Source: Mytilus trossulus (Eukaryota). Taken from it: a stretch of DNA of 64,000 bases. The DNA is taken from NCBI RefSeq assembly GCF_036588685.1, contig NC_086376.1, forward strand, positions 20,088,001-20,152,000. The letters run 5' to 3'. A program made the translations under genes and the position numbers. The notes below the pieces were generated by a model, which saw only the letters and a list, made by a program, of their open reading frames with translations, was not told where the DNA came from and made no database searches. The first letter of the stretch is position 1; every line of letters begins with the position of its first letter. Of this stretch, positions 5,413-57,505 are shown one piece after another.

Positions 5413-5478
5413 GACAATACAATGCACAAATATTGCTTTCTAGCAACATTCAGTCATGCTAAATTACTGAAATCTTCA

Positions 5479-39132: not shown

Positions 39133-39273
39133 AATTCGGAGATGTTTTTGAATACATAATGAACAACGGTCTCATGTCCGTTGAAGCCACCCTCTCTCTT
39201 TTCTCTCAGGTTGTCAAAGCAATCGAATACTGCCACTCAATTGGAATCGCCCACAATGACATTAAATTAGAAA

Positions 39274-40856
39274 GGCACTGGCTACGATTACATGGAAATG
39301 TAACAATAATAAAAATATTATTGTTACATAGGAGACTAAATGCCGGAATGCAAAGGCGGATAAGGAACCGATTAATTACGAATGTAACAATAATTACTGA
39401 GGCTACGGTTACATGGCGTTATTGTTACATGAAAAACAGCAATCATTAAACTTAAATCTTGCCGGTATAGTTTTGTTGCCTTAATCTTGCATATGTACGA
39501 AATAATACTTGTAACAATGATAAATAATAAATATTATCGTTAACGAATGGTGTTTAAATTTTTTTTCTAACGTATAAATGGTTTTGGTGTTTTAAAGATA
39601 CTACTTAAGGATGTTCGCTGCTCAGTTTCATAATAAATAACTTTTCATAAAACTTGTATGTATTGGTAGGGAATAAATTTAGGGATCAAAATAGCAAAAT
39701 AAAATATAGGGGTCCATGTGCTTGTTTTCGAGATATTAGCCATTGGAATTTTGGCGGGAAAATGTTCTCTCTTGATTTTTCATAGCTTTATCATTGACCA
39801 GTTAAAGTTCTCAAATACTATTATAAAATAAATAAAATTTTATAAGACTTTAACAAATGACTTATAATTATACATGTAAAAGATTTATAAAAAGAAAAAT
39901 GGGGGTTCATGGGGATTTTTTTTTAATTATTCAAATGGATAAAACCAGAGGATTCCAAAAATCTGACAAAAATTCCGAAACATGACAAGCAGACATCCTT
40001 AAGATAAGTAGTGCCAAAGGCGAAAATATAGACCAATGGTTTGTTGTTGAGAACTCGGGCTGAGAAAAGTGTTCACTTTAAGTATTTTAAAACTGCACAT
40101 CTACTCGTATTACTGTCATTATACAATGCACAATGGATGAAGAGATTCTTGTGACCAATTTTGTTGTGGGTGAAAAATTTAAAACTTGGGATTCGTTTGA
40201 AACAAAACTGAAACAATATCAAGACACAAATTTCATTCAGCTATACAAACGCAGTTCTAAAAAAAATTAACGGACGGCAATGTGACCATACTGAAAGATG
40301 ACATAAAACTACATCACATGCTTCCAACCAAAATATTAGATGAGAACATAAACATTGCTCGAGTGAAAAAGTATTTCCACCGGAAGCATGGCAAACATTA
40401 AAGGTCGCATTATCATCAAAAAGGGATATCGCAGAATGGAACTGTACAGTATGTGATACGGACGTTCACAGTGCGGCATCACTGGTGTGTGATGGCTGCT
40501 TGGAGTGGTTTCACCAAAAATGTGTCGGACTCAGAAATGCTCCAAAAACCACTTACTGGATATGTAGAAAATGTCATTGCAAATAAATAATTAAAGAATT
40601 TATATTTAATAATTGTATGTATTGTAAATATAAAATAAATGTCTTTAATTTTTATTATCTAGTACATTTTAATAGACCCATTGTATATTGCTGTTTTTCA
40701 TGTAACAATAACGCCATGTAACCGTAGCCTCAGTAATTATTGTTACATTCGTAATTAATCGGTTCCTTACCCGACCTTGCATTCCGTCATTTAGTCTCCT
40801 ATGTAACAATAATATTTTTATTATTGTTACATTTCCATGTAACCGTAGCCAGTGCC
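39274..40856 (+). mobile_element. Internally deleted Mutator-like element (MULE) with transposase remnant and PHD finger
   Basis: ~170-bp TIRs starting GGCACTGGCTACG; 9-bp TSD AATTAGAAA; remnants MDEEIL..VGEKFKTWDSFETKLKQY (40133) and a C4HC3 motif (40437-40586). Confidence 0.9.
39609..39998. mobile_element. Kolobok-like MITE nested in the MULE
   Basis: TTAA|GGATGT...ACATCC|TTAA. Confidence 0.65.
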
Positions 40857-42396
40857 AATTAGAAAACGTCTTGTTGTCTAATGGTTGTGTCAAATTGGCC
40901 GACTTTGGATTTGCCAAGTCGTCCGATATTGTTGCCGAATCTGAAGAATTTTGTGGAACCCTCCTCCCATACGCTGCCCCAGAAGTTATTATGGGAATGG
41001 AACACAGCACCATGAAAGCAGATATGTGGAGTATGGGAGTTATGCTCTACGTCATGCTCTTCGGAGCTTTCCCATTCTCCGATAGTGACGCTACCTCTAT
41101 GGTCCAATCTCAAATCTCAAACACCCTCTTTTTCCCAGAAAACACTAACGAAACGTTAAAGTCTCTCATCTCCTCTATGCTTGAACCCTCTATTGAAAAA
41201 CGCGCTAATGCAAGCTCAGTCCTTCTTGCCTTGAGCCAGTTTTAAACACATAATTAAGCATCCTTGAAATCACAATATGTTGTGATTTCAAGGATGCCTT
41301 TTTTTTTGTCTGAGCTGTTGTTACGGTAAACCGTGCGGACCTTCTTTTAATGTTACTTGATCAAATACGGTTACGTATTGCGGTTACGGTAAACACATGT
41401 TAACGTTTGGTCTACATTCCTTCTTTAGGAATGGTACTTCTTGTTTTATCAATGAGACACTGCTAAGTGATTAAGACTATTTGTTAGTCTAGTTTACCGT
41501 ACCACCAAACAATCCTTTAACATTTCAGTTTCCCGTTTCTTTGTATTAAATGTTTGAGAAACAAGATAAGGATATTGATAGGTAAAGATTTCAGGGTTTC
41601 TGTCCATTGATATCGAAACATATCAGCCGCGAGCCAGAGAGTTTCACCTTGTGTCGAGCGACTGAACACCCATAATCTCTTATTCGTTCTTTCACTATGT
41701 TTGTGCTAGACAAACGTAGGCCTGACAACGTCTTGTGACGTCGCTGATAACTTCTCAAACACTATGACGTTGCTGATATTATCTGCTCAGAGCAAAGACA
41801 TTTCTAGGTAAACTAATTGTATGAGGGTACGGTAAACAAAGATGCAATACCAAAATAAAAGGACCCAGTATTATACTTTATAGTCCAGTTTACCGTATCA
41901 GCATACATTTTTTTTTGTCTTCTGTGGAATTCATTTCTAATCCGAAACTCATTGAATAAATTGGAAGCAAATATCCCCTTGAACATTCAGACAGTGATTT
42001 AATTTCGTTTAGTTTGTTGTGGTTAACCTTCAGCGTGCGAAGAAACGGTAAACTGCAGAGTATACTTATACTAGTTGAGCTACGGTAAACCTTTAATAGA
42101 ATTTTTATGGTTACGGTAAACATTGCAGTCACAAGCTATGGAAAAGTTTATGGTAACGGTAAACATATAAGAAAAATGACTTAGAAATGTTAACCGTTTG
42201 CAAGAGTAGGTACTATTAATGAAAAGGGGAGCTATTTCCAAAAATGTACTATTTAATTATGTAAGGAAGCATTTATTAAGACTTGTCTCCCCTTGAACAT
42301 CAAGACATGGAAGAGGCCATATCGGTCGATTTACTATATAAGGCTTGCATTTCACTATTTGGGATCTTTATCACATCACATCCACGCCAGTTTAAA

Positions 42397-43138
42397 ATGG
42401 ATTTTTTAATGAACAATGGACTCTCAAATGTTGTAGCTCTTACTGAAGAAGTTTTCTCTGCCTCTAGCGAAATATTCGGTAAAGTTGCAATAAAGAAAGT
42501 CATCAAAACCTCAACTGAGTTTGAAGCTTTTCTCAGCCTCAAACACGAAAACATCGTCGAAGCCATTGAAATCATCGAAGCCGAAGAATTTGCCTTCGTT
42601 TTGATGGAATTTGCTGAATTCGGAGATGTTTTTGAATACATAATGAACAACGAACGGTCTCGTGTCCGTTGAAGCCACCCTCTCTCTTTTCTCTCAGGTT
42701 GTCAAAGCAATCGAATACTGCCACTCAATTGGAATCGCCCACAATGACATTAAATTAGAAAACGTCTTGTTGTCTAATGGTTGTGTCAAATTGGCCGACT
42801 TTGGATTTGCCAAGTCGTCCGATATTGTTGCCGAATCTGAAGAATTTTGTGGAACCCTCCCATACGCTGCCCCAGAAGTTATTATGGGAATGGAACACAG
42901 CACCATGAAAGCCGATATGTGGAGTATGGGAGTTATGCTCTACGTCATGCTCTTCGGAGCTTTCCCATTCTCCGATAGTGACGCTACCTCTATGGTCCAA
43001 TCTCAAATCTCAAACACCCTCTTTTTCCCAGAAAACACTAACGAAACGTTAAAGTCTCTCATCTCCTCTATGCTTGAACCCTCTATTGAAAAACGCGCTA
43101 ATGCAAGCTCAGTCCTTCTTGCCTTGAGCCAGTTTTAA
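42397..43138 (+). pseudogene. Kinase copy 2, frameshifted
   Basis: 4-bp duplication (aacaacgaacggt, ~42650) splits the ORF. Confidence 0.85.
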
Positions 43139-44289
43139 ACACATAATTAAGCATCCTTGAAATCACAATATGTTGTGATTTCAAGGATGCCTTTTTTTTT
43201 GTCTGAGCTGTTGTTACGGTAAACCGTGCGGACCTTCTTTTAATGTTACTTGATCAAATACGGTTACGTATTGCGGTTACGGTAAACACATGTTAACGTT
43301 TGGTCTACATTCCTTCTTTAGGAATGGTACTTCTTGTTTTATCAATGAGACACTGCTAAGTGATTAAGACTATTTGTTAGTCTAGTTTACCGTACCACCA
43401 AACAATCCTTTAACATTTCAGTTTCCCGTTTCTTTGTATTAAATGTTTGAGAAACAAGATAAGGATATTGATAGGTAAAGATTTCAGGGTTTCTGTCCAT
43501 TGATATCGAAACATATCAGCCGCGAGCCAGAGAGTTTCACCTTGTGTCGAGCGACTGAACACCCATAATCTCTTATTTGTTCTTTCACTATGTTTGTGCT
43601 AGACAAACGTAGGCCTGACAACGTCTTGTGACGTCGCTGATAACTTCTCAAACACTATGACGTTGCTGATATTATCTGCTCAGAGCAAAGACATTTCTAG
43701 GTAAACTAATTGTATGAGGGTACGGTAAACAAAGATGCAATACCAAAATAAAAGGACCCAGTATTATACTTTATAGTCCAGTTTACCGTATCAGCATACA
43801 TTTTTTTTTGTCTTCTGTGGAATTCATTTCTAATCCGAAACTCATTGAATAAATTGGAAGCAAATATCCCCTTGAACATTCAGACAGTGATTTAATTTCG
43901 TTTAGTTTGTTGTGGTTAACCTTCAGCGTGCGAAGAAACGGTAAACTGCAGAGTATACTTATACTAGTTGAGCTACGGTAAACCTTTAATAGAATGTTTA
44001 TGGTTACGGTAAACATTGCAGTCACAAGCTATGGAAAAGTTTATGGTAACGGTAAACATATAAGAAAAATGACTTAGAAATGTTAACCGTTTGCAAGAGT
44101 AGGTACCATTAATGAAAAGGGGAGCTATTTCCAAAAATGTACTATTTAATTATGTAAGGAAGCATTTATTAAGACTTGTCTCCCCTTGAACATCAAGACA
44201 TGGAAGAGGCCATATCGGCCGATTTACTATATAAGGCTTGCATTTCACTATTTGGGATCTTTATCACATTACATCCACGCCAGTTTAAA

Positions 44290-45029
44290 ATGGATTTTTT
44301 AATGAACAGTGGACTCTCAAATGTTGTAGCTCTTACTGAAGAAGTTTTCTCTGCCTCTAGCGAAATATTCGGTAAAGTTGCAATAAAGAAAGTCATCAAA
44401 ACCTCAACTGAGTTTGAAGCTTTTCTCAGCCTCAAACACGAAAACATCGTCGAAGCCATTGAAATCATCGAAGCCGAAGAATTTGCCTTCGTTTTGATGG
44501 AATTTGCTGAATTCGGAGATGTTTTTGAATACATAATGAACAACGGTCTCATGTCCGTTGAAGCCACCCTCTCTCTTTTCTCTCAGGTTGTCAAAGCAAT
44601 CGAATACTGCCACTCAATTGGAATCGCCCACAATGACATTAAATTAGAAAACGTCTTGTTGTCTAATGGTTGTGTCAAATTGGCCGACTTTGGATTTGCC
44701 AAGTCGTCCGATATTGTTGCCGAATCTGAAGAATTTTGTGGAACACTCCCATACGCTGCCCCAGAAGTTATTATGGGAATGGAACACAGCACCATGAAAG
44801 CCGATATGTGGAGTATGGGAGTTATGCTCTACGTCATGCTCTTCGGAGCTTTCCCATTCTCCGATAGTGACGCTACCTCTATGGTCCAATCTCAAATCTC
44901 AAACACCCTCTTTTTCCCAGAAAACACTAACGAAACGTTTTAAAGTCTCTCATCTCCTCTATGCTTGAACCCTCTATTGAAAAACGCGCTAATGCAAGCT
45001 CAGTCCTTCTTGCCTTGAGCCAGTTTTAA
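44290..45029 (+). pseudogene. Kinase copy 3, C-terminally truncated by +2 T frameshift
   Basis: aacgttttaaag vs aacgttaaag; stop at 44943 removes subdomain XI (could be a sequencing error). Confidence 0.75.
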
Positions 45030-46179
45030 ACACATAATTAAGCATCCTTGAAATCACAATATGTTGTGATTTCAAGGATGCCTTTTTTTTGTCTGAGCTG
45101 TTGTTACGGTAAACCGTGCGGACCTTCTTTTAATGTTACTTGATCAAATACGGTTACGTATTGCGGTTACGGTAAACACATGTTAACGTTTGGTCTACAT
45201 TCCTTCTTTAGGAATGGTACTTCTTGTTTTATCAATGAGACACTGCTAAGTGATTAAGACTATTTGTTAGTCTAGTTTACCGTACCACCAAACAATCCTT
45301 TAACATTTCAGTTTCCCGTTTCTTTGTATTAAATGTTTGAGAAACAAGATAAGGATATTGATAGGTAAAGATTTCAGGGTTTCTGTCCATTGATATCGAA
45401 ACATATCAGCCGCGAGCCAGAGAGTTTCACCTCGTGTCGAGCGACTGAACACCCATAATCTCTTATTCGTTCTTTCACTATGTTTGTGCTAGACAAACGT
45501 AGGCCTGACAACGTCTTGTGACGTCGCTGATAACTTATCAAACACTATGACGTTGCTGATATTATCTGCTCAGAGCAAAGACATTTCTAGGTAAACTAAT
45601 TGTATGAGGGTACGGTAAACAAAGATGCAATACCAAAATAAAAGGACCCAGTATTATACTTTATAGTCCAGTTTACCGTATCAGCATACAGTTTTTTTTG
45701 TCTTCTGTGGAATTCATTTCTAATCCGAAACTCATTGAATAAATTGGAAGCAAATATCCCCTTGAACATTCAGACAGTGATTTAATTTCGTTTAGTTTGT
45801 TGTGGTTAACCTTCAGCGTGCGAAGAAACGGTAAACTGCAGAGTATACTTATACTAGTTGAGCTACGGTAAACCTTTAATAGAATTTTTATGGTTACGGT
45901 AAACATTGCAGTCACAAGCTATGGAAAAGTTTATGGTAACGGTAAACATATAAGAAAAATGACTTAGAAATGTTAACCGTTTGCAAGAGTAGGTACCATT
46001 AATGAAAAGGGGAGCTATTTCCAAAAATGTACTATTTAATTATGTAAGGAAGCATTTATTAAGACTTGTCTCCCCTTGAACATCAAGACATGGAAGAGGC
46101 CATATCGGCCGATTTACTATATAAGGCTTGCATTTCACTATTTGGGATCTTTATCACATCACATCCACGCCAGTTTAAA

Positions 46180-46917
46180 ATGCATTTTTTAATGAACAGT
46201 GGACTCTCAAATGTTGTAGCTCTTACTGAAGAAGTTTTCTCTGCCTCTAGCGAAATATTCGGTAAAGTTGCAATAAAGAAAGTCATCAAAACCTCAACTG
46301 AGTTTGAAGCTTTTCTCAGCCTCAAACACGAAAACATCGTCGAAGCCATTGAAATCATCGAAGCCGAAGAATTTGCCTTCGTTTTGATGGAATTTGCTGA
46401 ATTCGGAGATGTTTTTGAATACATAATGAACAACGGTCTCATGTCCGTTGAAGCCACCCTCTCTCTTTTCTCTCAGGTTGTCAAAGCAATCGAATACTGC
46501 CACTCAATTGGAATCGCCCACAATGACATTAAATTAGAAAACGTCTTGTTGTCTAATGGTTGTGTCAAATTGGCCGACTTTGGATTTGCCAAGTCGTCCG
46601 ATATTGTTGCCGAATCTGAAGAATTTTGTGGAACCCTCCCATACGCTGCCCCAGAAGTTATTATGGGAATGGAACACAGCACCATGAAAGCCGATATGTG
46701 GAGTATGGGAGTTATGCTCTACGTCATGCTCTTCGGAGCTTTCCCATTCTCCGATAGTGACGCTACCTCTATGGTCCAATCTCAAATCTCAAACACCCTC
46801 TTTTTCCCAGAAAACACTAACGAAACGTTAAAGTCTCTCATCTCCTCTATGCTTGAACCCTCTATTGAAAAACGCGCTAATGCAAGCTCAGTCCTTCTTG
46901 CCTTGAGCCAGTTTTAA
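46180..46917 (+). CDS. Intronless Ser/Thr kinase, CAMK group, TSSK-like, 245 aa (copy 4, D2H)
   Basis: VAIK, HNDIKLEN, DFG, FCGTLPYAAPE, DMWSMGV; ATG downstream of a TATA box. Confidence 0.85.
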   Translation: MHFLMNSGLSNVVALTEEVFSASSEIFGKVAIKKVIKTSTEFEAFLSLKHENIVEAIEIIEAEEFAFVLMEFAEFGDVFEYIMNNGLMSVEATLSLFSQVVKAIEYCHSIGIAHNDIKLENVLLSNGCVKLADFGFAKSSDIVAESEEFCGTLPYAAPEVIMGMEHSTMKADMWSMGVMLYVMLFGAFPFSDSDATSMVQSQISNTLFFPENTNETLKSLISSMLEPSIEKRANASSVLLALSQF

Positions 46918-46929
46918 ACACATAATTAA

Positions 46930-46979
46930 GCATCCTTGAAATCACAATATGTTGTGATTTCAAGGATGCCTTTTTTTTT
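46930..46979 (+). terminator. 18-bp perfect hairpin + T9 after the kinase stop (representative; one per spacer); function unproven
   Basis: GCATCCTTGAAATCACAA-tatg-TTGTGATTTCAAGGATGC-c-TTTTTTTTT, starting 12 nt after TAA. Confidence 0.55.
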
Positions 46980-48006
46980 GTCTGAGCTGTTGTTACGGTA
47001 AACCGTGCGGACCTTCTTTTAATGTTACTTGATCAAATACGGTTACGTATTGCGGTTACGGTAAACACATGTTAACGTTTGGTCTACATTCCTTCTTTAG
47101 GAATGGTACTTCTTGTTTTATCAATGAGACACTGCTAAGTGATTAAGACTATTTGTTAGTCTAGTTTACCGTACCACCAAACAATCCTTTAACATTTCAG
47201 TTTCCCGTTTCTTTGTATTAAATGTTTGAGAAACAAGATAAGGATATTGATAGGTAAAGATTTCAGGGTTTCTGTCCATTGATATCGAAACATATCAGCC
47301 GCGAGCCAGAGAGTTTCACCTTGTGTCGAGCGACTGAACACCCATAATCTCTTATTTGTTCTTTCACTATGTTTGTGCTAGACAAACGTAGGCCTGACAA
47401 CGTCTTGTGACGTCGCTGATAACTTCTCAAACACTATGACGTTGCTGATATTATCTGCTCAGAGCAAAGACATTTCTAGGTAAACTAATTGTATGAGGGT
47501 ACGGTAAACAAAGATGCAATACCAAAATAAAAGGACCCAGTATTATACTTTATAGTCCAGTTTACCGTATCAGCATACAGTTTTTTTTGTCTTCTGTGGA
47601 ATTCATTTCTAATCCGAAACTCATTGAATAAATTGGAAGCAAATATCCCCTTGAACATTCAGACAGTGATTTAATTTCGTTTAGTTTGTTGTGGTTAACC
47701 TTCAGCGTGCGAAGAAACGGTAAACTGCAGAGTATACTTATACTAGTTGAGCTACGGTAAACCTTTAATAGAATTTTTATGGTTACGGTAAACATTGCAG
47801 TCACAAGCTATGGAAAAGTTTATGGTAACGGTAAACATATAAGAAAAATGACTTAGAAATGTTAACCGTTTGCAAGAGTAGGTACCATTAATGAAAAGGG
47901 GAGCTATTTCCAAAAATGTACTATTTAATTATGTAAGGAAGCATTTATTAAGACTTGTCTCCCCTTGAACATCAAGACATGGAAGAGGCCATATCGGCCG
48001 ATTTAC

Positions 48007-48013
48007 TATATAA
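48007..48013 (+). promoter_or_regulatory. TATA box of the kinase unit (representative; present in all 12)
   Basis: cTATATAAgg ~62 bp upstream of ATG, Inr-like TCACATC ~35 bp downstream of it. Confidence 0.7.
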
Positions 48014-48068
48014 GGCTTGCATTTCACTATTTGGGATCTTTATCACATCACATCCACGCCAGTTTAAA

Positions 48069-48806
48069 ATGGATTTTTTAATGAACAGTGGACTCTCAAA
48101 TGTTGTAGCTCTTACTGAAGAAGTTTTCTCTGCCTCTAGCGAAATATTCGGTAAAGTTGCAATAAAGAAAGTCATCAAAACCTCAACTGAGTTTGAAGCT
48201 TTTCTCAGCCTCAAACACGAAAACATCGTCGAAGCCATTGAAATCATCGAAGCCGAAGAATTTGCCTTCGTTTTGATGGAATTTGCTGAATTCGGAGATG
48301 TTTTTGAATACATAATGAACAACGGTCTCATGTCCGTTGAAGCCACCCTCTCTCTTTTCTCTCAGGTTGTCAAAGCAATCGAATACTGCCACTCAATTGG
48401 AATCGCCCACAATGACATTAAATTAGAAAACGTCTTGTTGTCTAATGGTTGTGTCAAATTGGCCGACTTTGGATTTGCCAAGTCGTCCGATATTGTTGCC
48501 GAATCTGAAGAATTTTGTGGAACCCTCCCATACGCTGCCCCAGAAGTTATTATGGGAATGGAACACAGCACCATGAAAGCCGATATGTGGAGTATGGGAG
48601 TTATGCTCTACGTCATGCTCTTCGGAGCTTTCCCATTCTCCGATAGTGACGCTACCTCTATGGTCCAATCTCAAATCTCAAACACCCTCTTTTTCCCAGA
48701 AAACACTAACGAAACGTTAAAGTCTCTCATCTCCTCTATGCTTGAACCCTCTATTGAAAAACGCGCTAATGCAAGCTCAGTCCTTCTTGCCTTGAGCCAG
48801 TTTTAA
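48069..48806 (+). CDS. Intronless TSSK-like kinase copy 5
   Basis: Intact 245-aa ORF, aaaATGg context. Confidence 0.88.
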   Translation: MDFLMNSGLSNVVALTEEVFSASSEIFGKVAIKKVIKTSTEFEAFLSLKHENIVEAIEIIEAEEFAFVLMEFAEFGDVFEYIMNNGLMSVEATLSLFSQVVKAIEYCHSIGIAHNDIKLENVLLSNGCVKLADFGFAKSSDIVAESEEFCGTLPYAAPEVIMGMEHSTMKADMWSMGVMLYVMLFGAFPFSDSDATSMVQSQISNTLFFPENTNETLKSLISSMLEPSIEKRANASSVLLALSQF

Positions 48807-49949
48807 ACACATAATTAAGCATCCTTGAAATCACAATATGTTGTGATTTCAAGGATGCCTTTTTTTTTGTCTGAGCTGTTGTTACGGTAAACCGTGCGGA
48901 CCTTCTTTTAATGTTACTTGATCAAATACGGTTACGTATTGCGGTTACGGTAAACACATGTTAACGTTTGGTCTACATTCCTTCTTTAGGAATGGTACTT
49001 CTTGTTTTATCAATGAGACACTGCTAAGTGATTAAGACTATTTGTTAGTCTAGTTTACCGTACCACCAAACAATCCTTTAACATTTCAGTTTCCCGTTTC
49101 TTTGTATTAAATGTTTGAGAAACAAGATAAGGATATTGATAGGTAAAGATTTCAGGGTTTCTGTCCATTGATATCGAAACATATCAGCCGCGAGCCAGAG
49201 AGTTTCACCTTGTGTCGAGCGACTGAACACCCATAATCTCTTATTCGTTCTTTCACTATGTTTGTGCTAGACAAACGTAGGCCTGACAACGTCTTGTGAC
49301 GTCGCTGATAACTTCTCAAACACTATGACGTTGCTGATATTATCTGCTCAGAGCAAAGACATTTCTAGGTAAACTAATTGTATGAGGGTACGGTAAACAA
49401 AGATGCAATACCAAAATAAAAGGACCCACTTTATAGTCCAGTTTACCGTATCAGCATACAGTTTTTTTTGTCTTCTGTGGAATTCATTTCTAATCCGAAA
49501 CTCATTGAATAAATTGGAAGCAAATATCCCCTTGAACATTCAGACAGTGATTTAATTTCGTTTAGTTTGTTGTGGTTAACCTTCAGCGTGCGAAGAAACG
49601 GTAAACTGCAGAGTATACTTATACTAGTTGAGCTACGGTAAACCTTTAATAGAATTTTTATGGTTACGGTAAACATTGCAGTCACAAGCTATGGAAAAGT
49701 TTATGGTAACGGTAAACATATAAGAAAAATGACTTAGAAATGTTAACCGTTTGCCAGAGTAGGTACCATTAATGAAAAGGGGGGCTATTTCCAAAAATGT
49801 ACTATTTAATTATGTAAGGAAGCATTTATTAAGACTTGTCTCCCCTTGAACATCAAGACATGGAAGAGGCCATATCGGCCGATTTACTATATAAGGCTTG
49901 CATTTCACTATTTGGGATCTTTATCACATCACATCCACGCCAGTTTAAA

Positions 49950-50687
49950 ATGGATTTTTTAATGAACAGTGGACTCTCAAATGTTGTAGCTCTTACTGAA
50001 GAAGTTTTCTCTGCCTCTAGCGAAATATTCGGTAAAGTTGCAATAAAGAAAGTCATCAAAACCTCAACTGAGTTTGAAGCTTTTCTCAGCCTCAAACACG
50101 AAAACATCGTCGAAGCCATTGAAATCATCGAAGCCGAAGAATTTGCCTTCGTTTTGATGGAATTTGCTGAATTCGGAGATGTTTTTGAATACATAATGAA
50201 CAACGGTCTCATGTCCGTTGAAGCCACCCTCTCTCTTTTCTCTCAGGTTGTCAAAGCAATCGAATACTGCCACTCAATTGGAATCGCCCACAATGACATT
50301 AAATTAGAAAACGTCTTGTTGTCTAATGGTTGTGTCAAATTGGCCGACTTTGGATTTGCCAAGTCGTCCGATATTGTTGCCGAATCTGAAGAATTTTGTG
50401 GAACCCTCCCATACGCTGCCCCAGAAGTTATTATGGGAATGGAACACAGCACCATGAAAGCCGATATGTGGAGTATGGGAGTTATGCTCTACGTCATGCT
50501 CTTCGGAGCTTTCCCATTCTCCGATAGTGACGCTACCTCTATGGTCCAATCTCAAATCTCAAACACCCTCTTTTTCCCAGAAAACACTAACGAAACGTTA
50601 AAGTCTCTCATCTCCTCTATGCTTGAACCCTCTATTGAAAAACGCGCTAATGCAAGCTCAGTCCTTCTTGCCTTGAGCCAGTTTTAA
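49950..50687 (+). CDS. Intronless TSSK-like kinase copy 6
   Basis: Intact 245-aa ORF. Confidence 0.88.
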   Translation: MDFLMNSGLSNVVALTEEVFSASSEIFGKVAIKKVIKTSTEFEAFLSLKHENIVEAIEIIEAEEFAFVLMEFAEFGDVFEYIMNNGLMSVEATLSLFSQVVKAIEYCHSIGIAHNDIKLENVLLSNGCVKLADFGFAKSSDIVAESEEFCGTLPYAAPEVIMGMEHSTMKADMWSMGVMLYVMLFGAFPFSDSDATSMVQSQISNTLFFPENTNETLKSLISSMLEPSIEKRANASSVLLALSQF

Positions 50688-51838
50688 ACACATAATTAAG
50701 CATCCTTGAAATCACAATATGTTGTGATTTCAAGGATGCCTTTTTTTTTGTCTGAGCTGTTGTTACGGTAAACCGTGCGGACCTTCTTTTAATGTTACTT
50801 GATCAAATACGGTTACGTATTGCGGTTACGGTAAACACATGTTAACGTGTGGTCTACATTCCTTCTTTAGGAATGGTACTTCTTGTTTTATCAATGAGAC
50901 ACTGCTAAGTGATTAAGACTATTTGTTAGTCTAGTTTACCGTACCACCAAACAATCCTTTAACATTTCAGTTTCCCGTTTCTTTGTATTAAATGTTTGAG
51001 AAACAAGATAAGGATATTGATAGGTAAAGATTTCAGGGTTTCTGTCCATTGATATCGAAACATATCAGCCGCGAGCCAGAGAGTTTCACCTTGTGTCGAG
51101 CGACTGAACACCCATAATCTCTTATTCGTTCTTTCACTATGTTTGTGCTAGACAAACGTAGGCCTGACAACGTCTTGTGACGTCGCTGATAACTTCTCAA
51201 ACACTATGACGTTGCTGATATTATCTGCTCAGAGCAAAGACATTTCTAGGTAAACTAATTGTATGAGGGTACGGTAAACAAAGATGCAATACCAAAATAA
51301 AAGGACCCAGTATTATACTTTATAGCCCAGTTTACCGTATCAGCATACAGTTTTTTTTGTCTTCTGTGGAATTCATGTCTAATCCGAAACTCATTGAATA
51401 AATTGGAAGCAAATATCCCCTTGAACATTCAGACAGTGATTTAATTTCGTTTAGTTTGTTGTGGTTAACCTTCAGCGTGCGAAGAAACGGTAAACTGCAG
51501 AGTATACTTATACTAGTTGAGCTACGGTAAACCTTTAATAGAATTTTTATGGTTACGGTAAACATTGCAGTCACAAGCTATGGAAAAGTTTATGGTAACG
51601 GTAAACATATAAGAAAAATGACTTAGAAATGTTAACCGTTTGCAAGAGTAGGTACCATTAATGAAAAGGGGAGCTATTTCCAAAAATGTACTATTTAATT
51701 ATGTAAGGAAGCATTTATTAAGACTTGTCTCCCCTTGAACATCAAGACATGGAAGAGGCCATATCGGCCGATTTACTATATAAGGCTTGCATTTCACTAT
51801 TTGGGATCTTTATCACATCACATCCACGCCAGTTTAAA

Positions 51839-52576
51839 ATGGATTTTTTAATGAACAGTGGACTCTCAAATGTTGTAGCTCTTACTGAAGAAGTTTTCTC
51901 TGCCTCTAGCGAAATATTCGGTAAAGTTGCAATAAAGAAAGTCATCAAAACCTCAACTGAGTTTGAAGCTTTTCTCAGCCTCAAACACGAAAACATCGTC
52001 GAAGCCATTGAAATCATCGAAGCCGAAGAATTTGCCTTCGTTTTGATGGAATTTGCTGAATTCGGAGATGTTTTTGAATACATAATGAACAACGGTCTCA
52101 TGTCCGTTGAAGCCACCCTCTCTCTTTTCTCTCAGGTTGTCAAAGCAATCGAATACTGCCACTCAATTGGAATCGCCCACAATGACATTAAATTAGAAAA
52201 CGTCTTGTTGTCTAATGGTTGTGTCAAATTGGCCGACTTTGGATTTGCCAAGTCGTCCGATATTGTTGCCGAATCTGAAGAATTTTGTGGAACCCTCCCA
52301 TACGCTGCCCCAGAAGTTATTATGGGAATGGAACACAGCACCATGAAAGCCGATATGTGGAGTATGGGAGTTATGCTCTACGTCATGCTCTTCGGAGCTT
52401 TCCCATTCTCCGATAGTGACGCTACCTCTATGGTCCAATCTCAAATCTCAAACACCCTCTTTTTCCCAGAAAACACTAACGAAACGTTAAAGTCTCTCAT
52501 CTCCTCTATGCTTGAACCCTCTATTGAAAAACGCGCTAATGCAAGCTCAGTCCTTCTTGCCTTGAGCCAGTTTTAA
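51839..52576 (+). CDS. Intronless TSSK-like kinase copy 7
   Basis: Intact 245-aa ORF. Confidence 0.88.
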   Translation: MDFLMNSGLSNVVALTEEVFSASSEIFGKVAIKKVIKTSTEFEAFLSLKHENIVEAIEIIEAEEFAFVLMEFAEFGDVFEYIMNNGLMSVEATLSLFSQVVKAIEYCHSIGIAHNDIKLENVLLSNGCVKLADFGFAKSSDIVAESEEFCGTLPYAAPEVIMGMEHSTMKADMWSMGVMLYVMLFGAFPFSDSDATSMVQSQISNTLFFPENTNETLKSLISSMLEPSIEKRANASSVLLALSQF

Positions 52577-53727
52577 ACACATAATTAAGCATCCTTGAAA
52601 TCACAATATGTTGTGATTTCAAGGATGCCTTTTTTTTTGTCTGAGCTGTTGTTACGGTAAACCGTGCGGACCTTCTTTTAATGTTACTTGATCAAATACG
52701 GTTACGTATTGCGGTTACGGTAAACACATGTTAACGTTTGGTCTACATTCCTTCTTTAGGAATGGTACTTCTTGTTTTATCAATGAGACACTGCTAAGTG
52801 ATTAAGACTATTTGTTAGTCTAGTTTACCGTACCACCAAACAATCCTTTAACATTTCAGTTTCCCGTTTCTTTGTATTAAATGTTTGAGAAACAAGATAA
52901 GGATATTGATAGGTAAAGATTTCAGGGTTTCTGTCCATTGATATCGAAACATATCAGCCGCGAGCCAGAGAGTTTCACCTTGTGTCGAGCGACTGAACAC
53001 CCATAATCTCTTATTCGTTCTTTCACTATGTTTGTGCTAGACAAACGTAGGCCTGACAACGTCTTGTGACGTCGCTGATAACTTCTCAAACACTATGACG
53101 TTGCTGATATTATCTGCTCAGAGCAAAGACATTTCTAGGTAAACTAATTGTATGAGGGTACGGTAAACAAAGATGCAATACCAAAATAAAAGGACCCAGT
53201 ATTATACTTTATAGTCCAGTTTACCGTATCAGCATACAGTTTTTTTTGTCTTCTGTGGAATTCATTTCTAATCCGAAACTCATTGAATAAATTGGAAGCA
53301 AATATCCCCTTGAACATTCAGACAGTGATTTAATTTCGTTTAGTTTGTTGTGGTTAACCTTCAGCGTGCGAAGAAACGGTAAACTGCAGAGTATACTTAT
53401 ACTAGTTGAGCTACGGTAAACCTTTAATAGAATTTTTATGGTTACGGTAAACATTGCAGTCACAAGCTATGGAAAAGTTTATGGTAACGGTAAACATATA
53501 AGAAAAATGACTTAGAAATGTTAACCGTTTGCCAGAGTAGGTACCATTAATGAAAAGGGGGGCTATTTCCAAAAATGTACTATTTAATTATGTAAGGAAG
53601 CATTTATTAAGACTTGTCTCCCCTTGAACATCAAGACATGGAAGAGGCCATATCGGCCGATTTACTATATAAGGCTTGCATTTCACTATTTGGGATCTTT
53701 ATCACATCACATCCACGCCAGTTTAAA

Positions 53728-54465
53728 ATGGATTTTTTAATGAACAGTGGACTCTCAAATGTTGTAGCTCTTACTGAAGAAGTTTTCTCTGCCTCTAGCG
53801 AAATATTCGGTAAAGTTGCAATAAAGAAAGTCATCAAAACCTCAACTGAGTTTGAAGCTTTTCTCAGCCTCAAACACGAAAACATCGTCGAAGCCATTGA
53901 AATCATCGAAGCCGAAGAATTTGCCTTCGTTTTGATGGAATTTGCTGAATTCGGAGATGTTTTTGAATACATAATGAACAACGGTCTCATGTCCGTTGAA
54001 GCCACCCTCTCTCTTTTCTCTCAGGTTGTCAAAGCAATCGAATACTGCCACTCAATTGGAATCGCCCACAATGACATTAAATTAGAAAACGTCTTGTTGT
54101 CTAATGGTTGTGTCAAATTGGCCGACTTTGGATTTGCCAAGTCGTCCGATATTGTTGCCGAATCTGAAGAATTTTGTGGAACCCTCCCATACGCTGCCCC
54201 AGAAGTTATTATGAGAATGGAACACAGCACCATGAAAGCCGATATGTGGAGTATGGGAGTTATGCTCTACGTCATGCTCTTCGGAGCTTTCCCATTCTCC
54301 GATAGTGACGCTACCTCTATGGTCCAATCTCAAATCTCAAACACCCTCTTTTTCCCAGAAAACACTAACGAAACGTTAAAGTCTCTCATCTCCTCTATGC
54401 TTGAACCCTCTATTGAAAAACGCGCTAATGCAAGCTCAGTCCTTCTTGCCTTGAGCCAGTTTTAA
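53728..54465 (+). CDS. Intronless TSSK-like kinase copy 8 (G>R after APE)
   Basis: Intact ORF; EVIMRMEH instead of EVIMGMEH. Confidence 0.86.
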   Translation: MDFLMNSGLSNVVALTEEVFSASSEIFGKVAIKKVIKTSTEFEAFLSLKHENIVEAIEIIEAEEFAFVLMEFAEFGDVFEYIMNNGLMSVEATLSLFSQVVKAIEYCHSIGIAHNDIKLENVLLSNGCVKLADFGFAKSSDIVAESEEFCGTLPYAAPEVIMRMEHSTMKADMWSMGVMLYVMLFGAFPFSDSDATSMVQSQISNTLFFPENTNETLKSLISSMLEPSIEKRANASSVLLALSQF

Positions 54466-55616
54466 ACACATAATTAAGCATCCTTGAAATCACAATATGT
54501 TGTGATTTCAAGGATGCCTTTTTTTTTGTCTGAGCTGTTGTTACGGTAAACCGTGCGGACCTTCTTTTAATGTTACTTGATCAAATACGGTTACGTATTG
54601 CGGTTACGGTAAACACATGTTAACGTTTGGTCTACATTCCTTCTTTAGGAATGGTACTTCTTGTTTTATCAATGAGACACTGCTAAGTGATTAAGACTAT
54701 TTGTTAGTCTAGTTTACCGTACCACCAAACAATCCTTTAACATTTCAGTTTCCCGTTTCTTTGTATTAAATGTTTGAGAAACAAGATAAGGATATTGATA
54801 GGTAAAGATTTCAGGGTTTCTGTCCATTGATATCGAAACATATCAGCCGCGAGCCAGAGAGTTTCACCTTGTGTCGAGCGACTGAACACCCATAATCTCT
54901 TATTCGTTCTTTCACTATGTTTGTGCTAGACAAACGTAGGCCTGACAACGTCTTGTGACGTCGCTGATAACTTCTCAAACACTATGACGTTGCTGATATT
55001 ATCTGCTCAGAGCAAAGACATTTCTAGGTAAACTAATTGTATGAGGGTACGGTAAACAAAGATGCAATACCAAAATAAAAGGACCCAGTATTATACTTTA
55101 TAGTCCAGTTTACCGTATCAGCATACAGTTTTTTTTGTCTTCTGTGGAATTCATTTCTAATCCGAAACTCATTGAATAAATTGGAAGCAAATATCCCCTT
55201 GAACATTCAGACAGTGATTTAATTTCGTTTAGTTTGTTGTGGTTAACCTTCAGCGTGCGAAGAAACGGTAAACTGCAGAGTATACTTATACTAGTTGAGC
55301 TACGGTAAACCTTTAATAGAATTTTTATGGTTACGGTAAACATTGCAGTCACAAGCTATGGAAAAGTTTATGGTAACGGTAAACATATAAGAAAAATGAC
55401 TTAGAAATGTTAACCGTTTGCAAGAGTAGGTACCATTAATGAAAAGGGGAGCTATTTCCAAAAATGTACTATTTAATTATGTAAGGAAGCATTTATTAAG
55501 ACTTGTCTCCCCTTGAACATCAAGACATGGAAGAGGCCATATCGGCCGATTTACTATATAAGGCTTGCATTTCACTATTTGGGATCTTTATCACATCACA
55601 TCCACGCCAGTTTAAA

Positions 55617-56354
55617 ATGGATTTTTTAATGAACAGTGGACTCTCAAATGTTGTAGCTCTTACTGAAGAAGTTTTCTCTGCCTCTAGCGAAATATTCGGT
55701 AAAGTTGCAATAAAGAAAGTCATCAAAACCTCAACTGAGTTTGAAGCTTTTCTCAGCCTCAAACACGAAAACATCGTCGAAGCCATTGAAATCATTGAAG
55801 CCGAAGAATTTGCCTTCGTTTTGATGGAATTTGCTGAATTCGGAGATGTTTTTGAATACATAATGAACAACGGTCTCATGTCCGTTGAAGCCACCCTCTC
55901 TCTTTTCTCTCAGGTTGTCAAAGCAATCGAATACTGCCACTCAATTGGAATCGCCCACAATGACATTAAATTAGAAAACGTCTTGTTGTCTAATGGTTGT
56001 GTCAAATTGGCCGACTTTGGATTTGCCAAGTCGTCCGATATTGTTGCCGAATCTGAAGAATTTTGTGGAACCCTCCCATACGCTGCCCCAGAAGTTATTA
56101 TGGGAATGGAACACAGCACCATGAAAGCCGATATGTGGAGTATGGGAGTAATGCTCTACGTCATGCTCTTCGGAGCTTTCCCATTCTCCGATAGTGACGC
56201 TACCTCTATGGTCCAATCTCAAATCTCAAACACCCTCTTTTTCCCAGAAAACACTAACGAAACGTTAAAGTCTCTCATCTCCTCTATGCTTGAACCCTCT
56301 ATTGAAAAACGCGCTAATGCAAGCTCAGTCCTTCTTGCCTTGAGCCAGTTTTAA
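55617..56354 (+). CDS. Intronless TSSK-like kinase copy 9
   Basis: Intact ORF; two synonymous changes seen. Confidence 0.88.
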   Translation: MDFLMNSGLSNVVALTEEVFSASSEIFGKVAIKKVIKTSTEFEAFLSLKHENIVEAIEIIEAEEFAFVLMEFAEFGDVFEYIMNNGLMSVEATLSLFSQVVKAIEYCHSIGIAHNDIKLENVLLSNGCVKLADFGFAKSSDIVAESEEFCGTLPYAAPEVIMGMEHSTMKADMWSMGVMLYVMLFGAFPFSDSDATSMVQSQISNTLFFPENTNETLKSLISSMLEPSIEKRANASSVLLALSQF

Positions 56355-57505
56355 ACACATAATTAAGCATCCTTGAAATCACAATATGTTGTGATTTCAA
56401 GGATGCCTTTTTTTTTGTCTGAGCTGTTGTTACGGTAAACCGTGCGGACCTTCTTTTAATGTTACTTGATCAAATACGGTTACGTATTGCGGTTACGGTA
56501 AACACATGTTAACGTTTGGTCTACATTCCTTCTTTAGGAATGGTACTTCTTGTTTTATCAATGAGACACTGCTAAGTGATTAAGACTATTTGTTAGTCTA
56601 GTTTACCGTACCACCAAACAATCCTTTAACATTTCAGTTTCCCGTTTCTTTGTATTAAATGTTTGAGAAACAAGATAAGGATATTGATAGGTAAAGATTT
56701 CAGGGTTTCTGTCCATTGATATCGAAACATATCAGCCGCGAGCCAGAGAGTTTCACCTTGTGTCGAGCGACTGAACACCCATAATCTCTTATTCGTTCTT
56801 TCACTATGTTTGTGCTAGACAAACGTAGGCCTGACAACGTCTTGTGACGTCGCTGATAACTTCTCAAACACTATGACGTTGCTGATATTATCTGCTCAGA
56901 GCAAAGACATTTCTAGGTAAACTAATTGTATGAGGGTACGGTAAACAAAGATGCAATACCAAAATAAAAGGACCCAGTATTATACTTTATAGTCCAGTTT
57001 ACCGTATCAGCATACAGTTTTTTTTGTCTTCTGTGGAATTCATTTCTAATCCGAAACTCATTGAATAAATTGGAAGCAAATATCCCCTTGAACATTCAGA
57101 CAGTGATTTAATTTCGTTTAGTTTGTTGTGGTTAACCTTCAGCGTGCGAAGAAACGGTAAACTGCAGAGTATACTTATACTAGTTGAGCTACGGTAAACC
57201 TTTAATAGAATTTTTATGGTTACGGTAAACATTGCAGTCACAAGCTATGGAAAAGTTTATGGTAACGGTAAACATATAAGAAAAATGACTTAGAAATGTT
57301 AACCGTTTGCAAGAGTAGGTACCATTAATGAAAAGGGGAGCTATTTCCAAAAATGTACTATTTAATTATGTAAGGAAGCATTTATTAAGACTTGTCTCCC
57401 CTTGAACATCAAGACATGGAAGAGGCCATATCGGCCGATTTACTATATAAGGCTTGCATTTCACTATTTGGGATCTTTATCACATCACATCCACGCCAGT
57501 TTAAA

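What the first reader, a model, noticed from the sequence alone, without database searches (positions are those of the whole stretch)
46995..47870. Nine exact ACGGTAAAC motifs per spacer, in both orientations
In one ~1.15-kb spacer I count 7 forward and 2 reverse exact 9-mers, plus variants (ACGGTTAC, AGGTAAAC, GTTAACCGT). They are embedded in otherwise unrelated sequence, and four cluster ~230-350 bp upstream of the ATG. A given 9-mer is expected about once per 130 kb at uniform composition. GTAAAC(A) is the Forkhead core and AACGGT a Myb core. This could be a homotypic enhancer (~100 sites across the array) or iteron-like binding sites for a replication or transposition protein.
Basis: partly seen in the sequence, partly recalled or inferred. 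Interest (0 to 1): 0.8.

Follow-up and report, generated by a model that had tools for sequence, protein, structure and literature searches.

The report
Conserved motif cluster in kinase-array spacers
Each spacer of a tandemly repeated mussel (Mytilus) testis-type kinase gene carries about nine exact copies of a 12-bp DNA word that selection has kept intact in three separately evolving arrays, so they are most likely docking sites for one still-unknown DNA-binding protein that controls these genes.

Summary
Spacer 46918-48068 holds 7 forward and 2 reverse exact ACGGTAAAC, about 0.006 expected. The window holds 108.

The window is a Mytilus chromosome. It carries 11-12 head-to-tail 1.89-kb units, each an intronless TSSK-like kinase gene plus a spacer. 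Two paralogous arrays lie on other chromosomes (97% and 90% protein identity).

Comparing the arrays shows the sites are functional:
- 7 of the 9 sites are exact at the same places in the most diverged array. There the non-motif spacer is 50-72% identical or unalignable.
- A dead relic unit has lost 4 of 6 sites.
- The flanks are unrelated, so this is not a decayed tandem repeat.

The real motif is longer, G-N-T-ACGGTAAAC (optimum GGTTACGGTAAAC). About 145 of the genome's 166 copies of that 13-mer lie in the three arrays.

RNA contigs start about 20-30 bp after a conserved TATA box, so the main cluster lies about -160 to -320.

Best reading: a homotypic cluster of sites for one sequence-specific protein. 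Canonical Forkhead or Myb cores do not fit.

This is a solid but ordinary kind of element, notable for being private to this gene family.

The parts
46995..47003 (+). Site 1 (ttgTTACGGTAAACc). It lies 78 bp after the stop codon, just past the hairpin and T9 run.
   Evidence: Exact 9-mer. The 15-nt block TTGTTACGGTAAACC is invariant in all three arrays.
47058..47066 (+). Site 2 (cGGTTACGGTAAACa).
   Evidence: Exact 9-mer. The 14-nt block CGGTTACGGTAAAC is invariant in all three arrays, although blastn cannot align the surrounding sequence to the C1 array.
47164..47172 (-). Site 3, reverse orientation.
   Evidence: Exact in the C4 and C3 arrays and absent from C1. Its 41-nt context is 76% like that of site 5, which indicates a local duplication (family D2).
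47200..47208 (-). One-mismatch variant ACGGGAAAC. It is an inverted near-copy of site 6.
   Evidence: pair I6: 16 nt, 94% complementary. Present in C4 and C3 but not in C1.
47501..47509 (+). Site 4 (gGGTACGGTAAACaa).
   Evidence: Exact in C4 and C1, where it sits in a ~24-bp island of homology inside unalignable spacer. The C3 array has ACGGTAAAG here.
47560..47568 (-). Site 5, reverse orientation.
   Evidence: Exact in C4 and C3 and absent from C1. In the dead relic unit it has decayed to GTTTGCCAT.
47717..47725 (+). Site 6, about -310 from the inferred transcription start.
   Evidence: Exact in all three arrays. It is retained in the relic unit.
47754..47762 (+). Site 7, about -275.
   Evidence: The 15-nt block TACGGTAAACCTTTA is invariant in all three arrays. 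The relic unit has ACTGTAAAC.
47785..47793 (+). Site 8, about -245. It has the full optimum TATGGTTACGGTAAACAT.
   Evidence: The 18-nt block is invariant in all three arrays. An insertion disrupts it in the relic unit.
47828..47836 (+). Site 9, about -200.
   Evidence: Exact in all three arrays. It is deleted in the relic unit.
47861..47869 (-). Site 10. Here it is a one-mismatch variant (GTTAACCGT on +). It is exact GTTTACCGT in the C1 array and in the relic unit, so the exact form is probably ancestral.
47865..47903 (+). Conserved block without the motif: ACCGTTTGCAAGAGTAG-TACCATTAATGAAAAGGGGAG. It is probably a further promoter element.
   Evidence: Blocks of 17 and 21 nt are invariant in all three arrays.
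48008..48016 (+). TATA box, TATATAAGG.
   Evidence: CTATATAAGGC is invariant in all three arrays. RNA contigs begin at 48026 (run X16) and 48035 (run X17).
46930..46979 (+). 3' hairpin (18-bp stem) followed by a T9 run, directly after the stop codon of the upstream unit.
   Evidence: pair I1. The stems and the T run are invariant across the arrays, while the C1 loop is 18 nt longer.
48069..48806 (+). Intronless 245-aa TSSK-like protein kinase gene, the gene served by the spacer.
   Evidence: Pfam Pkinase, E = 4e-51. The closest named proteins are Mytilus TSSK/TSSK3-like. dN/dS is 0.18 against the C1 array. RNA contigs cover it at higher depth than the spacer.
32508..61897 (+). The whole tandem array: 11 full 1.89-kb units plus a first unit whose gene is interrupted. 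Every spacer has 7 forward and 2 reverse sites.

Best explanation
The ACGGTAAAC words are the core of a 12-13-bp recognition sequence, G-N-T-ACGGTAAAC (optimum GGTTACGGTAAAC). One sequence-specific DNA-binding protein probably reads it.

Each 1.15-kb spacer carries a homotypic cluster of these sites:
- four to five sites at about -160 to -320 from the transcription start;
- one site in mid-spacer;
- two sites just past the 3' end of the upstream unit.

The cluster most likely acts as the upstream activating region (promoter-proximal enhancer) of the TATA-containing promoter of an amplified, intronless TSSK-like kinase gene. Many identical high-affinity sites would give cooperative, highly specific recruitment, so that about 57 gene copies in three arrays are switched on together.

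Shown here: the sites exist, the cluster form is private to this gene family, the sites lie upstream of the RNA start, and they are under purifying selection.

Inferred only: that a protein binds them, that binding activates transcription, and that this happens in the male germ line.
For: 1. Local excess. There are 9 sites per 1151 bp where about 0.006 is expected, and 108 in the window against 0.23 in shuffles.

2. Conservation against a diverged background. Three arrays exist: C4 (this window), C3:16.31-16.36 Mb and C1:26.00-26.03 Mb.
- C4 and C1 differ by dS = 0.26.
- Blastn aligns only the hairpin and the last ~390 bp of the spacer.
- Even so, 7 of 9 sites are exact at aligned places, against 5.6% of other 9-mer windows (binomial P ~6e-8).
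- The four proximal sites are all intact where non-motif columns are 72% identical, or 58% counting gaps. The chance of that is 6e-6 to 2e-9.
- Of the 16 blocks of 9 bp or more that are invariant in all three arrays, 7 hold the motif.
- Each site contains a CpG, in a genome with CpG observed/expected of 0.62.

3. Internal control. A dead relic unit at the edge of the C3 array has lost 4 of 6 sites, one of them by two changes, one a CpG-to-CpA change.

4. Within-array variation is lower in motif columns: 4 of 3267 against 214 of 44658 (Fisher P = 0.0016).

5. The information extends beyond the 9-mer. G at -3 occurs in 20 of 22 distinct contexts and T at -1 in 17 of 22.

6. Position. RNA contigs from two studies start at 48026 and 48035, after the conserved TATA box at 48008. 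Depth over the coding sequence is 3-4 times that over the spacer or more.

7. Co-expression. CDS contigs of both the C4/C3 type and the C1 type occur in the same RNA runs (records 13/14 and 20/21).

8. Both orientations occur, the flanks are unrelated and no Rfam family matches the motif region. All of this fits a DNA-level site.

9. The cluster is private to the family. About 145 of the 166 genomic copies of GGTTACGGTAAAC lie in the three arrays.
Against: - No binding, chromatin or reporter data exist.
- The expressing tissue is unknown. The RNA runs that hold the gene are gut metatranscriptomes assembled as contigs, which cannot give exact starts or levels.
- All seven sites conserved across the arrays point the same way as the gene. 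An orientation-independent activator does not predict this. It could reflect origin by local duplication or an orientation-dependent function.
- Nine identical cores with almost no degeneracy are unusual for ordinary enhancer clusters.
- Seven more distant TSSK paralogues have no exact site within about 4 kb. No unique-sequence cluster was found elsewhere. The putative factor would therefore have no other clustered target.
- The multiple alignment may be anchored on the motif itself. This is mitigated by the alignment-free counts.
- Concerted evolution makes the units within one array non-independent.
Confidence: 0.6

Rival explanations
1. Boundary, terminator or roadblock sites. The same kind of protein binding would serve to separate neighbouring units of a head-to-tail array. 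It would stop read-through from the upstream copy, or stop replication forks, rather than activate transcription. The parallel is TTF-I/Reb1 sites downstream of the rRNA gene and just upstream of the next rDNA promoter.
For: - Two conserved sites lie 78 and 141 bp after the stop codon, directly behind the conserved hairpin and T9 run. The main cluster lies just upstream of the next promoter.
- All seven sites conserved across the arrays share the orientation of transcription.
- The cluster occurs only in tandem arrays.
- Spacer RNA coverage is low or absent compared with the coding sequence.
- From memory only: the yeast Reb1 core, ACGGGTAA-like, resembles ACGGTAA.
Against: - The sites at -160 to -320 are equally typical of activators.
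- One reverse site (site 10) is conserved or ancestral.
- There are no data on termination or on replication forks.
- Contigs cannot show where transcripts end.
Confidence: 0.17
2. Binding sites for a protein derived from, or encoded by, a transposon. The function would be non-transcriptional, such as array amplification, recombination, homogenisation, or an iteron-like replication role on an extrachromosomal circle.
For: - A young dispersed repeat family (at least 40 loci, 97-100% identical) carries two to four 22-bp subrepeats ATGTTACGGTAAACATTTTTAC. It shares the 15-mer GTTACGGTAAACATT with site 8.
- The C4 array begins at unit position 1828 and ends at 1785.
Against: - Similarity between spacer and repeat is limited to that 15-mer.
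- No ORF of 150 aa or more lies in the repeat copies examined.
- Site spacing is irregular (37, 31, 43, 33 bp).
- No replication or transposase gene lies in the unit.
- The other two arrays end in unrelated phases of the unit.
- A control 9-mer forms as many close pairs in repeats genome-wide, so a repeat family sharing the word can be chance.
Confidence: 0.08
3. A neutral relic. The sites would be leftovers of an internal short tandem repeat, or of repeated local duplication, with no function.
For: - Some sites share short flanks. Sites 8 and 9 share TTTATGGTWACGGTAAACAT. The two reverse sites share 41 nt at 76% identity.
- Elsewhere, in this genome and in metagenomes, clusters of this 9-mer are strictly periodic tandem repeats.
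Against: - Flanks overall are no more alike than shuffled sequence.
- Spacing is aperiodic.
- Exact cores persist across dS = 0.26 while inter-site sequence drops to 50-72% identity.
- The sites decay in the one dead unit.
Confidence: 0.04
4. An RNA-level element in a spacer transcript, for example a protein or small-RNA target site.
For: - Low-depth RNA-library contigs cover parts of the spacer.
- The reverse complement matches the start of a mammalian miRNA discussed in papers found by the motif search. This is coincidental.
Against: - The sites occur in both orientations.
- They lie outside the main transcript, upstream of the RNA start and downstream of the hairpin.
- No Rfam match.
- Run X17 has no coverage over sites 1-3.
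Confidence: 0.02

Closest known systems
Homotypic clusters of transcription-factor binding sites in promoters and enhancers (for example Bicoid sites in the hunchback P2 promoter, or clustered Su(H) or GAGA sites)
   Same: Several copies of one motif lie within a few hundred bp upstream of a TATA promoter. Both orientations occur, spacing is irregular, and sites turn over (gain and loss) between paralogues while the cluster persists.
   Different: The cores are identical rather than degenerate. The motif is long (12-13 bp). In clustered form it is private to one amplified gene family. The binding factor is unknown.
TTF-I (Sal box) and Reb1/Nsi1 sites in rDNA intergenic spacers
   Same: The setting is a tandem gene array. 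Repeated, same-orientation sites for one protein lie just downstream of the gene's 3' end and again about 170-300 bp upstream of the next promoter.
   Different: This is a protein-coding gene with a TATA box, which suggests Pol II, not an rRNA gene. No termination or fork-barrier data exist. Sequence similarity to the Reb1 core is partial and recalled from memory only.
Forkhead (FOX) primary site RYAAAYA, that is GTAAACA
   Same: Every site contains GTAAAC.
   Different: The A that completes the core is present in only 4 of 9 sites (10 of 22 distinct contexts). The invariant ACGG and the G at -3 are not part of the FOX site.
Palindromic dimer sites of the GTTAC/GTAAC type (PAR-bZIP RTTAYGTAAY; RFX X-box GTNRCC-N-RGYAAC)
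   Same: GTTAC-G-GTAAAC is an imperfect inverted repeat of GTT(T)AC half-sites, which suggests a dimer or a two-domain reader. RFX factors are known spermatogenesis regulators (from memory).
   Different: The half-site spacing and one extra A do not fit either consensus. No comparison against a motif database was possible with these tools.
Subterminal transposase-binding repeats (for example the AAACGG repeats of maize Ac) and plasmid iterons
   Same: A short exact word is repeated many times in both orientations. The same extended word recurs in 22-bp subrepeats of a young dispersed repeat in this genome.
   Different: The unit holds no transposase or Rep gene. There are no terminal inverted repeats at the unit or array ends. 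Spacing is irregular. The sites lie upstream of a conserved cellular promoter.

Membership tests
Homotypic cis-regulatory cluster of binding sites | Three or more copies of one motif within a few hundred bp, far above chance | tested here: met
   There are 9 exact and 2 near sites in 1151 bp, with 4-5 of them in 153 bp, where about 0.006 is expected.
Homotypic cis-regulatory cluster of binding sites | Located in non-transcribed DNA upstream of the regulated promoter | tested here: met
   RNA contigs start at 48026 and 48035, after the TATA box at 48008. The proximal cluster is at 47717-47869. Contigs give only approximate starts.
Homotypic cis-regulatory cluster of binding sites | Sites conserved relative to the surrounding sequence | tested here: met
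   7 of 9 sites are exact in the C1 array, against 5.6% of other 9-mer windows. A relic unit has lost 4 of 6 sites. This rests on paralogous arrays only.
Homotypic cis-regulatory cluster of binding sites | A protein binds the sites and changes transcription | not testable with these tools
   This needs EMSA or pull-down, footprinting, and reporter mutagenesis.
Forkhead binding site | Core RYAAAYA (GTAAACA) with the final A | tested here: not met
   The base after GTAAAC is A in 4 of 9 sites, T in 3 and C in 2. Over distinct contexts from the three arrays it is A in 10 of 22.
Myb binding site | Core YAACGG / YAACNG | tested here: not met
   Only 2 of 9 sites have AACGG, and only one has YAACGG. 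The base at -1 is T in 17 of 22 contexts, giving TACGG.
   Flank similarity equals that of shuffles (z = 1.2 and -0.7). Start-to-start spacings are 63, 106, 337, 59, 157, 37, 31 and 43 bp. Tandem Repeats Finder reports nothing in the spacer. Only two site pairs share short flanks.
Iterons or transposase-binding subterminal repeats | Association with a replication or transposase gene, or with element termini | tested here: not met
   The unit encodes only the kinase. The array ends fall at different unit phases with no terminal repeats. The repeat family that shares the word has no ORF of 150 aa or more in the copies read.
Known RNA family | Match to an Rfam covariance model at the gathering score | tested here: not met
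   The only matches are sub-threshold generic hairpin hits on the 3' hairpin. Nothing matches at the motif sites.

The most novel reading that the evidence does not exclude
The 12-13-bp word may be a private operator for a lineage-specific DNA-binding protein, possibly derived from a transposon. That protein would exist to manage these ampliconic kinase arrays. It might bind about 480 sites on three chromosomes to coordinate germ-line expression. It might also mark unit boundaries (termination, fork arrest, recombination or homogenisation), as TTF-I does in rDNA or CLAMP does at the Drosophila histone locus. The same word in a young, active-looking dispersed repeat would then mean that a mobile element uses, or supplied, the same factor.
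Probability: 0.15. Interest if true: 0.7.

Novelty: new member of a known kind. Interest (0 to 1): 0.42.

Why it matters
Bivalve cis-regulation is almost uncharted, and no mussel promoter element has a known binder. This site set is unusually clean: identical cores, a 12-13-bp specificity, roughly 480 copies, conservation across paralogues, and a dead-copy control. That makes a pull-down or footprint experiment straightforward.

Such an experiment could identify the regulator of an amplified TSSK-like gene family. This family is a candidate ampliconic germ-line gene system in a group with unusual sex determination and mitochondrial inheritance.

If the factor also serves array architecture or is shared with a mobile element, the locus would become a model for how tandem gene amplicons are controlled. 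As it stands, it is a well-supported but conventional regulatory cluster.

Tried and rejected
- Metagenome scan for three sites in a row. It returned 112 loci. All are strictly periodic tandem repeats (periods 7-54 bp), and none is related to the unit by blastn or tblastn. This is uninformative except as a base rate.
- Literature searches for the 9-mer in either orientation. They found only primers, guide sequences and a mammalian miRNA, and no described binding site.
- Search for Mytilus TSSK papers. It gave only general evidence that mollusc TSSKs are testis-expressed (for example PMC8042308 and PMC6905558), and nothing on these arrays.
- Genome-wide search for other clusters. Outside the three arrays every close pair lies in a tandem repeat, a 60-bp satellite, or one dispersed repeat. 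A control word gives similar numbers. The listings are capped at 100 rows and same-strand gaps above 49 bp could not be separated from array hits, so sparse clusters may have been missed.
- Seven distant TSSK paralogues. They have no exact sites, so the motif is not a general TSSK-promoter element.
- Spacer derived from a transposon. Rejected for the dispersed repeat, which shares only a 15-mer. No copies of the mid-spacer were found outside the C4 and C3 arrays, although only the best 40 candidates were scored.
- Tissue of expression. The runs that hold the gene are coded DNA runs and gut or other metatranscriptomes, so no tissue can be named.
- Forkhead, Myb, PAR-bZIP, RFX and Reb1 assignments. 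These were considered from memory and none fits fully. No motif database was available.
Full report
**The observation**

The finding is accurate. In the spacer between the stop codon at 46915-46917 and the ATG at 48069 there are seven forward sites (46995, 47058, 47501, 47717, 47754, 47785, 47828) and two reverse sites (47164, 47560) of exact ACGGTAAAC. There are also one-mismatch variants at 47200 and 47861. The window holds 108 exact copies, against 0.23 expected from dinucleotide-preserving shuffles. All lie in the 12 spacer copies of a tandem array and none lies in the coding sequence.

**Context**

The window is G000:C4:20088001-20152000 of a 1.3-Gb genome with 32% G+C. The genome is a Mytilus, probably M. 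trossulus. The reason is that contig C3 has exactly the length of the contig that carries NCBI's 'TSSK3-like [Mytilus trossulus]' protein.

The repeat unit is 1889 bp. It consists of a 1151-bp spacer and an intronless 245-codon protein-kinase gene (Pfam Pkinase, E = 4e-51). The closest named relatives of the kinase are Mytilus 'TSSK' proteins, followed by arthropod testis-specific kinases at 33-39% identity.

The window holds 11 full units at 99.4-100% identity, plus a first unit whose gene is interrupted.

Two further arrays exist:
- about 30 units on C3:16.308-16.365 Mb, on the minus strand, with 97% protein identity;
- about 16 units on C1:26.001-26.030 Mb, with 90% protein identity and a unit of 1711-1726 bp.

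Earlier notes of this scan describe these arrays independently (s1-820514, s1-820519).

The next nearest kinases in the genome are only about 37% identical.

**Is it more than chance, and is it local?**

Genome-wide the 9-mer occurs 6605 times. Markov models of orders 0-4, trained on 204 kb of non-array sequence from this genome, predict 5100-7900. The word is therefore not enriched globally. The excess is confined to the arrays, roughly 480 sites in about 108 kb.

An alignment-free k-mer count shows that in each of the three array spacers the motif is the only k-mer (k = 7-12) repeated more than a handful of times.

**Is it a decayed tandem repeat?**

- Tandem Repeats Finder sees nothing in the spacer.
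- Start-to-start spacings are irregular: 63, 106, 337, 59, 157, 37, 31 and 43 bp.
- With the motif removed, the 22-nt flanks of the nine sites are no more similar to one another than shuffled flanks (z = 1.2 upstream, -0.7 downstream).
- Only two pairs show a local-duplication signature. Sites 8 and 9 share TTTATGGTW before the core. The two reverse sites share 41 nt at 76% identity.

Some sites probably arose by small duplications, but the cluster is not a repeat relic.

**The true motif is longer**

I pooled the 22 distinct site contexts from the three array consensus sequences.
- Position -3 is G in 20 of 22.
- Position -1 is T in 17 of 22.
- Position -2 is T in 12 of 22.
- Position -4 is G in 13 of 22.
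- The base after the core is unconstrained (A 10, T 6, C 6).

The recognition sequence is thus G-N-T-ACGGTAAAC, with optimum GGTTACGGTAAAC. It is an imperfect inverted repeat of GTT(T)AC half-sites.

It also argues against the Myb reading, because AACGG is present in only 2 of 9 sites.

The 13-mer occurs 166 times in the genome. About 145 of these lie in the three arrays: 61 are listed on C1, about 60 are on C3, and 24 are in this window. The remaining ~20 singletons match chance expectation. In clustered form the motif is therefore private to this gene family.

**Conservation**

The coding sequences of C4 and C1 differ by dS = 0.26 with dN/dS = 0.18, so the kinase is under purifying selection.

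Between their spacers, blastn aligns only the hairpin region (unit 33-90) and the last ~390 bp before the ATG. The middle ~670 bp is unalignable.

I aligned 44 spacers from the three arrays.
- 7 of the 9 C4 sites are exact at the aligned places in C1.
- Only 5.6% of other 9-mer windows are perfectly conserved (binomial P ~6e-8).
- Sites 2 and 4 survive as 14- and ~24-bp islands inside the unalignable part.

Around the proximal cluster, non-motif columns are 72% identical, or 58% counting gaps. The chance that all four 9-mers stay intact is 6e-6 to 2e-9.

Of the 16 blocks of 9 bp or more that are invariant in all three arrays:
- seven contain the motif;
- three are the 3' hairpin and T-run;
- most of the others are promoter elements, including CTATATAAGGC and a 38-bp block at 47865-47903.

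There is also turnover:
- C3 has lost site 4 (ACGGTAAAG);
- C4 and C3 carry a T-to-A change in site 10, which is exact in C1;
- the two reverse sites are specific to C4 and C3.

Within arrays, deviations from the array consensus are four times rarer in motif columns, 4 of 3267 against 214 of 44658 (Fisher P = 0.0016). The units are not independent, so this is supporting evidence only.

**An internal negative control**

At the downstream edge of the C3 array lies an old, dead unit. It is 79-85% identical, has lost its start codon and carries indels. Of the six sites it covers, four have decayed:
- GTTTACCGT has become GTTTGCCAT;
- ACGGTAAAC has become ACTGTAAAC;
- one site is disrupted by an insertion;
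- one site is deleted.

Two sites remain, which is about what neutral decay predicts. The sites are therefore maintained only where the unit is alive.

**Position relative to the transcript**

In two RNA libraries from different studies (X16, X17), contigs begin at 48026 and 48035. That is 10-27 bp after the conserved TATA box (48008-48016). They cover the coding sequence at depth 14-25. The spacer has depth 0-4.

Contigs cannot fix a start exactly, and DNA carry-over cannot be excluded. Even so, the picture is a TATA promoter with a 5' UTR of about 30-45 nt. On that basis:
- the proximal sites lie at about -160 to -320;
- site 4 lies at about -530;
- sites 1 and 2 lie 78 and 141 bp behind the upstream unit's stop codon, just past the hairpin and T9 run.

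CDS contigs of both the C4/C3 type and the C1 type (10 differences in 113 nt) occur in both RNA runs. This is consistent with co-expression of the diverged arrays.

All spacer differences that the tool listed between runs fall outside the 9-mers (substitutions at 47103, 47357, 47676, 47696, 47777, 47796, 47851 and 48035, and indels at 47042-47050, 47098, 47106, 47584 and 47736). 24 further differences were not listed.

The runs are gut or environmental metatranscriptomes and coded DNA runs. The expressing tissue therefore remains unknown.

**Elsewhere in the genome**

Same-strand pairs of the 9-mer within 0-49 bp occur outside the arrays only in repeats:
- a 60-bp satellite on C23;
- several minisatellites with periods of 20-48 bp;
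- one dispersed repeat family.

A control word gives comparable numbers of pairs. This is therefore the normal behaviour of any 9-mer in a repeat-rich genome.

Seven distant TSSK paralogues have no exact site within about 4 kb.

The dispersed repeat is worth noting. It is present at 40 or more loci at 97-100% identity. It contains a (CCGGCGGTTGAGTTAA)n minisatellite and two to four 22-bp subrepeats, ATGTTACGGTAAACATTTTTAC. It often lies in inverted pairs.

It shares with the spacer only the 15-mer GTTACGGTAAACATT. No ORF of 150 aa or more was found in the copies read. Given several repeat families that contain the word, a match of the three extra 5' bases is not significant by my estimate (about 0.1). 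I treat it as a lead, not as evidence.

**Mechanism**

The robust conclusion, which I put at about 85%, is that these are sites for a sequence-specific DNA-binding factor and are kept by purifying selection.

The most likely role (0.6) is an upstream activating cluster for the kinase promoter. The supporting points are the position upstream of a TATA box, occurrence in both orientations, clustering, site turnover with the cluster retained, and co-expression of the arrays.

A boundary, terminator or roadblock role like that of TTF-I/Reb1 in rDNA spacers is a real alternative (0.17). Its support is that all seven conserved sites share the gene's orientation and two sit directly behind the 3' hairpin.

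A transposon-derived or replication-related role (0.08) has only the shared 15-mer and the circular permutation of this array in its favour.

A neutral relic (0.04) and an RNA-level element (0.02) are disfavoured. For the latter, no Rfam family matches the motif region.

**Limits**

All conservation evidence comes from paralogous arrays within one genome.
- The one metagenome scan found only unrelated periodic repeats.
- No motif database, binding data or chromatin data were available.
- Literature searches found no description of this word as a binding site.

**Verdict**

It is explained as a conserved homotypic cluster of binding sites with a 12-13-bp specificity that is private to an amplified TSSK-like gene family. 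It is a new member of a well-known kind of element. Interest is moderate, and would be higher if the binder proves to be array-dedicated or transposon-derived.

Noticed in passing
G000:C4:20784676-20786386 (L005 3676-5385); also L006, L007, L008, L027, L028: A young dispersed repeat family, at 40 or more loci with 97-100% identity. It often forms inverted pairs 0.8-3 kb apart. It contains a (CCGGCGGTTGAGTTAA)n minisatellite and two to four 22-bp subrepeats ATGTTACGGTAAACATTTTTAC that share the 15-mer GTTACGGTAAACATT with spacer site 8. No ORF of 150 aa or more was found in the copies read, and the superfamily is undetermined.
   Followed up: partly
G000:C23:513001-523000 (L009): A 60-bp satellite in which nearly every monomer carries AACGGTAAACTAC (77 exact sites in 10 kb). 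It has a higher-order period of about 1783 bp. It contributes to the genome-wide count of the 9-mer.
   Followed up: partly
window 46930-46979, and the same place in the C3 and C1 arrays: The hairpin (18-bp stem) and T9 run directly after the stop codon are invariant in all three arrays, while the C1 loop is 18 nt longer. No AATAAA lies nearby. This suggests an unusual 3'-end signal. It is also noted as s1-826810.
   Followed up: partly
window 47865-47903: A 38-bp block, ACCGTTTGCAAGAGTAG.TACCATTAATGAAAAGGGGAG, is almost invariant between all three arrays and does not contain the motif. It lies between the motif cluster and the TATA box and is probably a second promoter element.
   Followed up: no
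G000:C3 about 16307050-16307870 (reverse complement of L023+L003, positions 7130-7950): An old, dead kinase unit sits at the edge of the C3 array. It is 79-85% identical, has lost its start codon and carries indels and internal duplications. It served as a neutral-decay control for the motif sites.
   Followed up: yes
window 32508 and 61897: The array starts at unit position 1828 and ends at unit position 1785. Both ends therefore fall within about 42 bp of the same phase inside the kinase ORF. This is compatible with integration of a circular multi-unit intermediate. It is also noted as s1-826671. The C1 and C3 arrays end in other phases.
   Followed up: partly
window 33944-40856: The kinase gene of the first unit is split by about 6.9 kb of foreign sequence. 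Fragments of the ORF lie at 33721-33943, 39133-39273 and 40857-41245. Its spacer still has all nine sites.
   Followed up: no
L030-L141 (metagenome contigs): Three or more ACGGTAAAC within 15-45 bp occur in over 112 metagenome contigs from soil, marine and gut samples. All are strictly periodic tandem repeats (periods of 7, 11, 14, 21, 28 bp and so on), including (ACGGTAA)n microsatellites. They are unrelated to the mussel unit.
   Followed up: yes
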